From Blastocystis sp. Blastoise (Eukaryota > Protista > Bigyra: Opalinata): a stretch of 64,000 bases of DNA. The DNA is taken from NCBI GenBank assembly GCA_039096225.1, contig JBBPEB010000005.1:248001-312000 (forward strand), read 5' to 3'. The notes under the pieces were generated by a model. It saw nothing but the letters and a program-made list of their open reading frames with translations, had not been told where the DNA came from and did no database searches. The position numbers and the translations under genes were made by a program. Shown one piece after another: positions 47,667-58,668 of the stretch (its first letter is position 1; each line of letters begins with the position of its first letter).

Positions 47667-50600
47667 TTATATTTCTCTTAATACTTGAGCAATAGTATGA
47701 ACACTAGTACGTATTTCATCTTCAGTATGATTTGCACTAATAAAGAAACGCAATCTTGCTTTTCCTGCTTCTACAGCAGGATACATACCTGCACTTACTA
47801 ATACTCCTCGTTCTCTTAATAATCTCATAGCTTCAATACATCTCTCTGTCGCACCACAATGAACTGGAATGACTGCACTTTCACAGGTAGTACATTGATA
47901 TATATTTAATCCTTCTTCTATACATAATTTCTTAAATAAATCAGTTCGATCTCGTAATTGTTTTATTCTCCAAGTTTCTTTTCTCGCTACTTTAAGAGCC
48001 ATCAATGCAGCAGCAGCATTTGGAGGAGGTAATCCAATACTATATACAAAGCCAGGCGCTCTATATCTTAATATTTGTACCATCTTTTTAGAACCTGCTA
48101 AATAGCCACCAGCTGAAGCAAATGCTTTTCCTAAAGATCCCATCCATATATCTACTAATGTCATATCTATATGGAAATGTTCACCTAAACCTCTTCCTGT
48201 TTCTCCTAATACTCCTATACTATGAGCTTCATCTACATATAAAATACAATTATATTTCTGTTTAATTCTGATTATTTCTGGTAAATTAGGTAAATCTCCA
48301 TCCATTGAATAGACTCCTTCAATTACTATTAATACTTTCTCATACTTCTTTCTTAATTTCTTTAATTTCTGTTCTAAATCTTCAGTATTATTATGTATAA
48401 AAGCAAAACGAGCAGAACCACAATATAAAGCACCTTCTATAATACTATTATGAGCTAAACTATCATATAATATCATATCATTCTTACTCATTAAGGTACG
48501 TATACAATTAACATTAGCTGTATGACCTCCTAACATTACTATACAATCTTCAACACCTAAGAAATCAGCTATTTCTCGTTCTAATTCATTATGTATTGGA
48601 ATCTGACCTCCTGCTAATCGTGAAGCACTCACACTTGTACCATATAATTTAACACCATTTTCAGCAGCTTCACGAACTTCAGAAGATGTAGATAATCCTA
48701 AATAATCATAAGTTGTGTAATTCACACAATTTGTGAATCCTTCAATATCAGAAACAGTAGCTGTTTTTTTATCTTGAGTAAAATAATAAGGATTCCAAGG
48801 TAAACTCTTTAAATAAGTAGTCATTTCAAAAAATTCACGAGTATTTTCCCATTTAAAGTGATCTGAAGGAGTAATATCACGGAAATTCATTTTTGCACCT
48901 GTGATTTCTTTCATAACAGATATTTCTAATGGATTCTCTGCTTTATTCTTATCATAAGGTTTAATTGAATTTAATAATGTGTTATTATTATTATTATTTG
49001 TATTATTTGTAATAGTATCAGTTTCATCTGTATCTTGAAGAATAATTGATCGTTCAATAGTATCAATTAATGATATATCATCGTTAGGAACAGGACGAGA
49101 GAGAACAGAAGAAGAAGAAAAGAGATGCATAGAAATATCTAAAGATATATATTTATATATATATTGTAAAATCAAAGGTTATAATTATATTTAATAGGCA
49201 TTAATATAGATAGATAAATAAATAAATATATATATATTAAAAAGAGTATATATTATTATTATAGTATACTAGAGTTATTATTAATATATATATATATATT
49301 AAAAAGAGTATATACTATTATAAAAGTATAATAGAATTATTAATATATATATATAAATTAAAAAGAGTATATACTATTATAAAAGTATAATAGAATTATT
49401 AATATATATATATATACCATCCTCATTATATTCTTCATCCTCAATACTAATACTATTTTCATGAGCTATTGTATCTACATGTTCTTCAACATTCTTAATT
49501 AATTCTGATAATGTTTTACCACTAGTTAATTCAAATAAAGGCATATTCATATCCCATTGAGAATCTAATATATTATTTAATTCTACAGCTACAATACTAT
49601 CGATTCCAAAGTTTGTTAATGATTGATCGACATGTAAAGAATCTGCTTCTAATCCTAATAATAATCCTATAGATTCTTTTATATGACTAGATATAAAGGA
49701 AGAACGCTGCTCATAAGGAAGAAGAAGAGTCTATATAATAATATATATAATAATATATCATTATTATATATAATAATATAAAAAATAATATATATGATAA
49801 TAATTAATTAAATAGATTATAATAAATATAATAACAAATATATATAATAATAAATAAATAAAATCAATAAATAATAAGTCATTATATATATACGTCTCTT
49901 AGTATTTGATCTGTATTTCCGATTTTCTTCAACTTCATTGCTTTCTTATCATATAATAAAGACACTATTGGTTTCTCCTTTATTTGGTTGGCACTCGAAT
50001 CTGAAAATGGGTGAATAATCATCTGAGTTGGAAGTATATGTGTATTATTATTATTATTATTATATATATCCTCTGGAATAGAAACATCACATTCATATAT
50101 TTCAGGATTATATTTAGTTTCTTTAACAATGAATTTCTCTGTAGTATCTCCTTTTAATGAATTTGATATATTATTATTATTATTATTATTATTATTATTA
50201 TTATTATTATTATTATTATTATTATTATTATTATTATTATTATTATTATTGTTATTATCATTATCATTATCATTATCATTATTATTATCATTATCATTAT
50301 CATTATCATTATTATTATCATTATCTTTCCAGAATTGGCGGCGTTGATTCCAAACAGAACCAACTATTGTTGATGAACTACTATTATTATTATGATTAAT
50401 ATCATCAGGATCATCTATTTCCTTTCCTTCTTTATCCTTATAATTCTTTTCATATACATTTTGTAATATTATTTCTATTCCTTTGAATATATCAGTAATA
50501 CTTATCATTTCATCCTTTAAATCTTTTGTTAATATATTCTTATTACGACTAACAGCACCTGCATCCAATACACCTCCTAAATTCAATACACTACCTGAAT

Positions 50601-56600: not shown

Positions 56601-58668
56601 ATATTATTCTCTGAACCATTCTCTTCTTCTTCTTCTTCTCTATCAATCTCGCTTATATCAATTTCATTTGATATATTTTTCCATATTTTTTGTCCATTAT
56701 TCATACTATCTATTCGTCTATCTATATACTCTTCTAATATAACATGAGCATTAGTTCCTCCAATGCCAAAACTATTCACACCAGCTCTTCTTATAGTATA
56801 ACATTTTGGCCATTCTTCTTCTATTACAGGAACTCTTAATTGTAATTTATCAAAATCAATTTCTGGATTTGGAGTAATATATTTTATATTTGGAGGTATT
56901 TTCCCGTGGTAAATAGCTAATGCAGATTTAATTAATCCAGTGACACCTGCAGCCCCTTCTAAATGTCCATAATTCGATTTTATAGATCCAATTAATAAAG
57001 GAGTCTTTCTTTCTGGGGAACATAAGGCATGTCCTGTAGGTTTATATACATAGTATATAATAATAATGATAATATATATATATGTTATATATAAAATAAT
57101 AATAATAATAATAATAATAATAATAATAATAATAATAATAATAATAATAATAATAATAATAATAATAAACATAAATACCAATAGAAATAGCTTCTGTTCG
57201 ATCTCCTACTACAGTTCCTGTGCCATGGGCTTCCATATATCCTACAGAATCAGGATCGATTCCTATTTCTTTATATAATCTCATCATAAGGTCCGATTGA
57301 CCATTCTTTGAAGGAACTGTAATCGCTTGTTTATGGCCATCATGATTCACACCTCTATATATATATATAGAATTATGTTTTAATAAGTTATATAAAAATA
57401 GTTAAGATTAATTAAAAACAAATAAAAGTAGTAGAAATTTTTTTTTATTATAATTATTAAATAATAATAATAATAATAATAATAATAATAATAATAATAA
57501 TAATAATAATAATAATAATAATAATAATAATAATAATAATAATAATAATAATAATAATAATAATATATACGAATGACGTATGACAGCGTAGATGCGATCT
57601 CCTGATTCTTCAGCATCTTTCAAGCGTTTTAATAGGACAATAGAAGATCCTTCAGCTCTGACGTACCCATTAGCACGTGCATCAAAACTGAAACTGTGAC
57701 CATCTTTTGACATCGTACCCCAATCCGTAAATCCTATAGATTATGTTATAATAATAATAATAATAATAATAATAATAATAATAATAATAATAATAATAAA
57801 CATATATAATAATAATAATAATAATAAACATATATACCCACAAAGTATCGAGGATCTAGTAGTGCATTCGCTCCCCCTGCAAGTGCCCAAGAACATTCTC
57901 CGTTTCGAATGGCAGTAACTGCATGATGTATAGCGACAAGAGAAGAAGAACAAGCAGTATCTATTACTTCGGATGGACCATGTATATCTAAGAAATAAGA
58001 AAGACGATTTGCGGCCATTGTAGGAGCATTTCCTTGCATAGCATGAGAATTAATAGTATAACGATTTATATTTAATATATTCATATAATCCTATAATAAA
58101 AATAACATGAAATAAATAAAATTCTTAAAGAAGTAGTACTATTTACTATTAATAATAATAATAATAATAATGATTTCAGATAAATATATATAATAGAATA
58201 ATATACTTCGGTCATATGACCAATAAAAACACCTCCATCTTTTGAATGTGACGATAAAACAAAACCTGCATCTTCTAAGGCAAACCATGATGCCTATAGA
58301 TATATATTAAATTCGTAATTATATATTTAAAAAAATAAATACTTCAAGAATCAAACGAATTTGTGGATCTAATTCACGAGCTTCATTGGGAGATAAATTA
58401 AAGAATGGTGCATCGAATTCAGCAATATTATCGACAAATGCTCCTCTACTGGAAACCTAATGAAACGAATAAAAATAATTCTTAATAAAAAAGAACGTAC
58501 AGATGATCCACGAATTTTGTCTTTTGTACACCAAAAATCTTTTGTAAAACGGTCGTTTGGTATTTCTTTTGTTACGTCCTTTCGTTTCTCAATAATATCC
58601 CAGAACTCATCTGGAGAGTCTGCTTCTGGAAGACGTAAACCAATACCAACAATTGCAATTGGTTCCAT
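47667..58668 (-). CDS. Type I reducing polyketide/fatty-acid synthase KS-AT-DH-ER-KR-ACP fused to a C-terminal PLP-dependent alpha-oxoamine synthase (AONS/SPT family); ~2800 aa estimated
   Basis: KS: [31 protein letters not shown]: GQGAQW, GHSSGE, HAFH. DH: [17 protein letters not shown]: [12 protein letters not shown]: GGTKGIG, YCSGN. ACP: [13 protein letters not shown]: YDYLGL, SASRL, AHNS, DEAH, GSLGKAF. 15 GT-AG introns keep one open frame to TAA at 47667. Confidence 0.92.
50167..50322 (-). repeat. Coding (AAT)n/(GATAAT)n run encoding poly-Asn/Asn-Asp in the PKS KR-ACP linker
   Basis: In-frame, stop-free run inside ORF 49882..51099. Confidence 0.75.
52248..52436. repeat. Intronic compound minisatellite built from AAATAATATTAAAT units
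   Basis: Tandem degenerate copies within a PKS intron. Confidence 0.8.

What the first reader, a model, noticed from the sequence alone, without database searches (positions are those of the whole stretch)
47667..58668. One-polypeptide PKS/FAS plus alpha-oxoamine synthase: candidate self-contained sphingoid/amino-lipid synthase in a protist
Seen: a single fully reducing module with intact motifs (KS Cys, AT GHS with the malonyl-type HAFH, DH His/Asp, ER, KR Tyr/Asn, ACP Ser), and no recognisable thioesterase, reductase or C-methyltransferase. The ACP exon (49730-49418) has no stop. It joins through a canonical GT-AG intron (49417-49139) in frame to a complete PLP-dependent alpha-oxoamine synthase (DEAH, GSLGK). 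Known: this enzyme family (serine palmitoyltransferase, AONS/BioF, Fum8, SxtA, PigH) condenses an amino acid with an acyl thioester with decarboxylation. Bacterial RkpA/RkpG and WcbR/WcbT pair this PKS architecture with a separate AONS-like gene. Inference: the enzyme iteratively builds a saturated chain and releases it directly as a 3-keto-sphinganine-like amino-ketone, bypassing the usual FAS/acyl-CoA/LCB1-LCB2 route. It may be a laterally acquired gene that later gained 15 introns.
Basis: partly seen in the sequence, partly recalled or inferred. Interest (0 to 1): 0.92.

Follow-up and report, generated by a model that had tools for sequence, protein, structure and literature searches.

The report
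Blastocystis one-chain sphingoid-base synthase candidate
The gut protist Blastocystis seems to lack the normal first enzyme of sphingolipid synthesis, but carries a bacterial-type giant enzyme that could build a fatty chain and join it to an amino acid in one protein, which would fill that known gap.

Summary
Sixteen exons (58668-47667, minus strand) joined by 15 GT-AG introns give a stop-free 2,800-aa KS-AT-DH-ER-KR-ACP-AOS protein with all catalytic motifs. No reads could be laid, but orthologues settle the fusion: several encode KS-to-AOS as one uninterrupted 2,400-2,500-aa frame. The genome matches the Blastocystis tortoise isolate Rus-B (inferred from size and GC). The gene is the orthologue of the B. 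hominis ST7 'putative polyketide synthase' (XP_012899446.1), reported in 2011 without mention of its AOS domain. The AOS falls among bacterial PKS-linked enzymes (SgaB/RkpG type), not with BioF (AU p=0.0003) or Kbl. The same fused layout is common in cyanobacteria and planctomycetes, so the fusion is not new and was probably acquired whole. [quoted passage not shown] Best reading (0.6): it replaces serine palmitoyltransferase, working like Pseudomonas SgaAB. The amino-acid substrate and product are untested, and ceramide synthase was not detected in this genome. The scan had noted another PKS elsewhere in this genome, not this fusion.

The parts
47667..58668 (-). Whole gene: 16 exons, 15 GT-AG introns, 2,800 aa, KS-AT-DH-(structural region)-ER-KR-ACP-linker-AOS
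56700..58668 (-). Ketosynthase over exons 1-7 (58668-58501, 58456-58343, 58293-58207, 58090-57838, 57733-57571, 57354-57179, 57033-56375); Cys-His-His triad intact; starts at residue 1, no leader peptide
55026..56114 (-). Acyltransferase, exons 8-9; active Ser and HAFH (malonyl-type) motif
53727..54871 (-). Dehydratase, exon 10; His964 and Asp1144
52493..53560 (-). Exons 11-12: structural region without a Pfam match (no C-methyltransferase) and start of ER
51535..52205 (-). Enoylreductase core, exon 13; NADPH motif intact
50572..51279 (-). End of ER and ketoreductase, exon 14; catalytic Tyr1952
49990..50460 (-). Low-complexity Asn/Asp insertion between KR and ACP; orthologues have a much shorter spacer
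49418..49730 (-). Acyl carrier protein, exon 15; Ser2251
49139..49417 (-). Intron 15 (279 nt, phase 1) in the variable ACP-AOS linker; no break here in most orthologues, and a 27-nt in-frame phase-1 GT-AG stretch at the same place in the closest one (L001)
47667..49138 (-). Linker and PLP-dependent alpha-oxoamine synthase, exon 16; PLP Asp/His, Lys2648 and carboxylate-binding Arg present; model pLDDT 94.7

Best explanation
A cytosolic, single-module, iteratively acting, fully reducing type I PKS with a built-in alpha-oxoamine synthase. Shown: architecture, intact active sites, conservation across at least a dozen Blastocystis-like lineages, AOS subfamily. Inferred: the module extends malonyl units to a saturated long acyl chain on the ACP. 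The AOS domain then condenses this acyl-ACP with an amino acid, most likely L-serine, with loss of CO2, releasing a 3-keto-sphinganine-type base. The protist's own KDSR and ceramide synthase would process it further. The gene came from bacteria as a ready-made fusion before Blastocystis diversified and stands in for the lost LCB1/LCB2 serine palmitoyltransferase.
For: Uninterrupted fused orthologues; all catalytic motifs kept across them. AOS lies in a 99%-supported clade of PKS/FAAL-linked AOSs with SgaB/RkpG-like proteins and shares their motifs. Grouping with BioF is rejected, p-AU 0.0003; grouping with SgaB/RkpG-like proteins is not, p 0.077. PfSgaAB (iterative PKS plus AOS) makes C24-C28 sphinganines and SgaB is serine-specific (PMC12134224). 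Only two AOS-family genes are found in this genome, this one and a Kbl. [quoted passage not shown] A long-frame carboxyltransferase gene consistent with acetyl-CoA carboxylase, an AcpS-type PPTase and SPHK-like genes are present.
Against: No sequence feature fixes the amino acid: AOS subfamilies are about equally close to SPT, Kbl and ThAOS structures, and related PKS-linked AOSs use Ala or aminomalonate (PMC13612406). No TLC ceramide synthase or glucosylceramide synthase was found in this genome (weak negatives, although ELO was found the same way). SPT absence rests on an exon-wise search with a loose first filter. The SgaB proxy is a Pseudomonas sp. TMW 2.1634 homologue, not PfSgaB itself. 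Splice and expression were not shown directly.
Confidence: 0.6

Rival explanations
1. Same chemistry, different end use: the enzyme releases an amino-ketone lipid from Ala, Gly or another amino acid, or a serine-derived base that is secreted or anchors a surface glycan (as for the RkpA/RkpG capsule loci). It would not feed ordinary ceramide synthesis, and Blastocystis would scavenge host sphingolipids.
For: Bacterial relatives sit beside capsule and glycosyltransferase genes. Fum8, SphA and MyrA use Ala or aminomalonate. Ceramide synthase was not detected in this genome. KDSR, CERS and SPHK could serve salvage.
Against: KDSR acts on 3-keto bases and has little use in pure salvage (own knowledge). 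The gene is kept, apparently single-copy, in every Blastocystis-like lineage retrieved, at 65-92% AOS identity, more like primary metabolism than a patchy secondary cluster. It has no tailoring neighbours: copine upstream, Sin1 downstream.
Confidence: 0.28
2. It is mainly the cytosolic fatty-acid synthase; acyl chains leave by transacylation or hydrolysis and the AOS is incidental.
For: Fully reducing malonyl-type module without methyltransferase; the 2011 paper suggested it could make fatty acids.
Against: No thioesterase. The AOS is the most conserved domain (66% to ST7 against 39-55% for AT, DH, ER, KR). Two other reducing PKSs, a FabF-like KS and elongases exist in this genome.
Confidence: 0.07
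3. The AOS is a BioF (biotin) or Kbl-type housekeeping enzyme fused by chance.
For: Best NCBIfam score is bioF, below cut-off; many hits carry the automatic name 8-amino-7-oxononanoate synthase.
Against: AU test rejects grouping with BioF. Motifs differ from BioF and Kbl. The genome has a separate Kbl, 62% identical to a kbl next to tdh.
Confidence: 0.03
4. In this isolate PKS and AOS are two genes, or intron 15 is retained, giving separate proteins.
For: The last exon has its own in-frame Met and the ACP frame meets a stop 13 codons into the intron; no RNA junction was observed.
Against: Canonical in-frame intron. The ACP-to-AOS distance of 206 aa lies within the 154-217 aa of uninterrupted orthologues, and the sister orthologue matches both sides of the junction in one frame.
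Confidence: 0.02

Closest known systems
Pseudomonas fluorescens MYb115 SgaA/SgaB(/SgaC) (PMC12134224)
   Same: Monomodular iterative type I PKS released by an AOS; yields long-chain sphinganines. A Pseudomonas PKS+AOS+SDR locus of this layout has an AOS 43% identical with shared subfamily motifs.
   Different: Two genes in a bacterial cluster with its own SDR, described as secondary metabolism. Here: one spliced eukaryotic gene, no cluster, shorter DH-ER region, apparently replacing SPT.
B. hominis ST7 'putative polyketide synthase' XP_012899446.1 (PKS of PMC3129679, identity of the two inferred)
   Same: Orthologue: 39-74% identity exon by exon and the same domain order including Aminotran_1_2 at 2211-2556.
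   Different: The 2011 text lists six PKS domains, compares it with a fungal T-toxin PKS and does not mention the AOS; later review text treats it as a possible virulence factor.
Bacterial fused KS-AT-DH-ER-KR-ACP-AOS proteins (Planktothrix WP_042158693.1, Blastopirellula WP_105338069.1, Stanieria, Thermocoleostomius)
   Same: Identical one-chain layout, 2,450-2,750 aa.
   Different: 36-47% identity; no product described in the papers I could search; often next to glycosyltransferases.
Sinorhizobium RkpA/RkpG-like locus
   Same: Reducing PKS plus AOS of the same clade, 41%.
   Different: Separate genes in a capsule locus; the names are assigned here from gene context, not tested.
Fungal Fum1/Fum8, sphingofungin PKS/SphA, MyrB/MyrA
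   Same: Highly reducing PKS without TE, released by an AOS, followed by a KDSR-like step.
   Different: Separate genes; distant AOS (SphA E 6e-26); Ala or aminomalonate; products are toxins or inhibitors.
Eukaryotic SPT (LCB1/LCB2)
   Same: Same fold and proposed reaction; SPT2 E 1e-57, TM about 0.9.
   Different: Membrane heterodimer using acyl-CoA under ORM control. Here no membrane segment, tethered acyl-ACP, ORMDL not found.

Membership tests
alpha-oxoamine synthases | Fold-type I PLP fold with stacking His, Asp-x-x-His, Schiff-base Lys and C-terminal Arg | tested here: met
Highly reducing monomodular type I PKS | KS-AT-DH-ER-KR-ACP with intact active sites | tested here: met
Highly reducing monomodular type I PKS | Iterative use and chain length | not testable with these tools
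   inferred from the single module and from SgaA
SgaAB-type PKS sphinganine synthase | Reducing PKS without TE paired with an AOS of the PKS-linked clade | tested here: met
   proxy sequences, not MYb115 itself
SgaAB-type PKS sphinganine synthase | Direct orthology to SgaB (sister group) | tested here: inconclusive
   not sisters in the best tree; forcing them together is not rejected, p-AU 0.077
SgaAB-type PKS sphinganine synthase | Two adjacent genes with a clustered KDSR-like SDR | tested here: not met
   one fused gene; neighbours are copine and Sin1
SgaAB-type PKS sphinganine synthase | L-serine specificity and sphinganine product | not testable with these tools
   needs enzymology and lipidomics
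Eukaryotic SPT (LCB1/LCB2) | Stand-alone, membrane-anchored heterodimer | tested here: not met
   fused to PKS, no hydrophobic segment, no partner subunit found
BioF | Groups with BioF and carries its motifs | tested here: not met
Animal-type fatty acid synthase | Terminal thioesterase | tested here: not met

The most novel reading that the evidence does not exclude
Blastocystis, and perhaps its gut-dwelling relatives, lost the canonical LCB1/LCB2 serine palmitoyltransferase and makes its sphingoid bases with one laterally acquired PKS-AOS megasynthase. It would be a eukaryote whose primary sphingolipid pathway starts from a polyketide synthase, and a protist source of sphingoid lipids in the human gut.
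Probability: 0.5. Interest if true: 0.92.

Novelty: new variant of a known kind. Interest (0 to 1): 0.8.

Why it matters
SPT is treated as the entry to sphingolipids in eukaryotes, and the ST1 genome paper left Blastocystis with downstream enzymes but no entry step. This gene gives a concrete candidate and turns the 'PKS of unknown product', discussed since 2011 as a possible virulence factor, into a testable lipid-synthesis hypothesis. Bacterial PKS-derived sphinganines change host lipid metabolism in C. elegans (PMC12134224), so the most common gut eukaryote could be an unrecognised source of such lipids. It would also put a first function on a widespread fused bacterial family for which I found no described product.

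Tried and rejected
The spliced model was never searched as a joined sequence: searches were exon by exon or used uninterrupted orthologues. Single-sequence folding failed (pLDDT 42.7); the alignment-based model worked. A careful AOS tree did not finish, so trees are quick searches with SH-aLRT only. The KS tree does not resolve a donor. PF08390 was not in the library. Eme et al. 2017 was not held. Paper searches found no report of the AOS domain or of a Blastocystis SPT. No synteny with orthologous loci was found. No LCB2, KDSR, ceramide-synthase or true PfSgaB sequence was available as a query. Rejected: BioF, Kbl, bacterial contamination (15 spliceosomal introns, eukaryotic neighbours), unique fusion.

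Full report
Observation. The region is a minus-strand, AT-rich, intron-containing gene. All 15 junctions are GT-AG, and joining the 16 exons from 58668 to 47667 gives 2,800 codons with a single terminal stop. Exons are 30% GC and introns 3.5-20%. Exon-wise Pfam scans give KS, AT, DH, ER, KR, ACP and Aminotran_1_2 in order, with no thioesterase, reductase or methyltransferase. The protein begins directly with the KS and has no hydrophobic segment, so it is probably cytosolic.

Organism. The assembly has 33.34 Mb in 34 contigs. This matches Blastocystis sp. Rus-B from a Russian tortoise (33.3 Mb, 33 contigs, 23.1% GC, long introns; PMC10690189). The identification is an inference. The neighbours are copine and Sin1, so the gene is embedded in eukaryotic DNA and is not part of a cluster.

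Is it one polypeptide? Two runs, one a polyA gut metatranscriptome, hold 58% and 36% of the sampled words of the 3' part, which only hints at expression. The joined model was not used as a search query. Comparative evidence is strong. Splicing-blind gene calls from gut metagenomes give single frames of 2,400-2,540 aa running from KS through ACP into the AOS (P0162, P0163, P0165-P0171), and loci L049, L051 and L052 have no break from the KS to the stop. The closest orthologue, L001, breaks at the same 14 upstream positions and is open across ACP-AOS; at that junction it has a 27-nt in-frame GT-AG stretch of the same phase, so intron 15 is probably shared, and the frame is continuous either way. 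The junction falls in a variable linker, with 206 aa from ACP Ser to the AOS start motif against 154-217 aa in orthologues.

Relation to known Blastocystis genes. The cluster of P0167 contains B. hominis ST7 XP_012899446.1, 'putative polyketide synthase', 2,567 aa, which has the same domains including the AOS at 2211-2556. The 2011 genome paper describes a laterally acquired type I PKS with the three core domains plus DH, KR and ER, likens it to a fungal T-toxin PKS and does not mention an AOS. So the gene is known, but its release domain appears unremarked in the literature I could search. About a dozen Blastocystis-like lineages carry it at 65-92% AOS identity. Two more distant AT-rich eukaryotes (L051, L052; 50-59%) share introns 1 and 2 and branch just outside them with 100% support for the whole group in the AOS tree and 97% in the KS tree. 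Their identity is unknown; deep Blastocystis lineages or related gut stramenopiles are plausible. They have two introns, high-GC subtypes about four or five, and this lineage 15, which fits gradual gain but does not prove it.

What kind of AOS? The model is confident (pLDDT 94.7) and matches bacterial SPT, Kbl and ThAOS about equally (TM about 0.91), so fold does not give the substrate. In trees the eukaryotic group nests in a 99%-supported clade of PKS- or FAAL-linked AOSs that includes SgaB-like and RkpG-like proteins and fused cyanobacterial enzymes, apart from BioF, Kbl and HemA. Holding it with BioF is rejected (p-AU 0.0003); holding it with the SgaB/RkpG-like pair is not (0.077). It shares that clade's motifs and differs from BioF and Kbl at the same positions. 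No LCB2 sequence was available for the tree.

Is the fusion new? No. Fifteen further 50%-clusters have KS-AT-ER-KR-AOS in one chain, among them Blastopirellula marina, and there are many cyanobacterial examples. An EukProt entry named EG_transcript_82 (Euglena-style name, from memory) has a similar chain without ER and does not group with Blastocystis. Lateral acquisition of a ready-made fusion is the simplest reading. The donor is unresolved.

Pathway context. Three searches find only two AOS-family genes in this genome: this one and a Kbl. ORMDL was not found. [quoted passage not shown] This genome has a probable acetyl-CoA carboxylase, an AcpS-type PPTase, elongases and SPHK-like genes. Ceramide synthase and glucosylceramide synthase were not found. 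These negatives are weak for divergent, spliced genes, but they count against the simplest version.

Mechanism. By analogy with Pseudomonas SgaAB, where an iterative PKS and a serine-specific AOS make C24-C28 sphinganines (PMC12134224), and with the fungal PKS/AOS/KDSR systems (PMC13612406), the module most likely builds a saturated acyl chain from malonyl-CoA. The AOS then releases it by decarboxylative condensation with an amino acid. Architecture, conservation and subfamily are shown; iteration, chain length, serine use and entry into ceramides are inferred. I give 0.6 to SPT replacement with serine, 0.28 to another amino-lipid or surface anchor, and 0.12 to the remaining readings.

Verdict. 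Real and conserved; a new variant of PKS-plus-AOS sphingoid synthesis, not a new category. Its interest lies in the match between an overlooked domain and a published pathway gap in the most common gut eukaryote, and in being directly testable. Interest 0.8.

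Noticed in passing
G000:C2 about 983,650-995,400 (-); loci L026, L027: Second PKS: KS-AT-DH-ER-KR, five ACPs, enoyl-CoA hydratase domains and an HMG-CoA synthase in one 3,768-aa open frame, resembling a beta-branching cassette or isoprenoid-like route fused into one chain.
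   Followed up: partly
G000:C22 about 106,200-114,200 (-); loci L028, L029: Third PKS: KS-AT-DH-ER-KR with three ACPs and no release domain in the open frame; its KS is sister to the C2 PKS with 100% support.
   Followed up: partly
window 8154-8864 (-): Intron-free Asp/Glu racemase-family ORF; best NCBIfam matches cysteate racemase and amino-acid racemase, both below cut-off; candidate lateral transfer.
   Followed up: partly
window 2872-7497 (+): 1,541-aa Thr-rich open frame with bacterial-type He_PIG Ig repeats, probably a surface protein.
   Followed up: no
window 15397-19350 (+): 1,317-aa open frame with no Pfam or NCBIfam match.
   Followed up: no
P0555 (EukProt EG_transcript_82): Another eukaryote-sourced ACP-KS-AT-DH-KR-ACP-AOS chain, without ER, separate from the Blastocystis clade: a probable independent acquisition.
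   Followed up: partly
L051 3333-10733 and L052 1673-9049: Unidentified AT-rich eukaryotes with about 30-40-nt introns and the full fusion, outside all Blastocystis-like copies.
   Followed up: partly
L046 7787-11146: Sheep omasum Clostridia MAG with a FAAL-ACP-AOS chain of the same AOS clade: a gut anaerobe with related amino-lipid machinery.
   Followed up: no
G000:C26 637,693-639,123 and C8 2,063,749-2,065,179: Two near-identical-scoring, intron-free carboxyltransferase genes (515-aa frames), possibly a duplicated bacterial-type gene.
   Followed up: no
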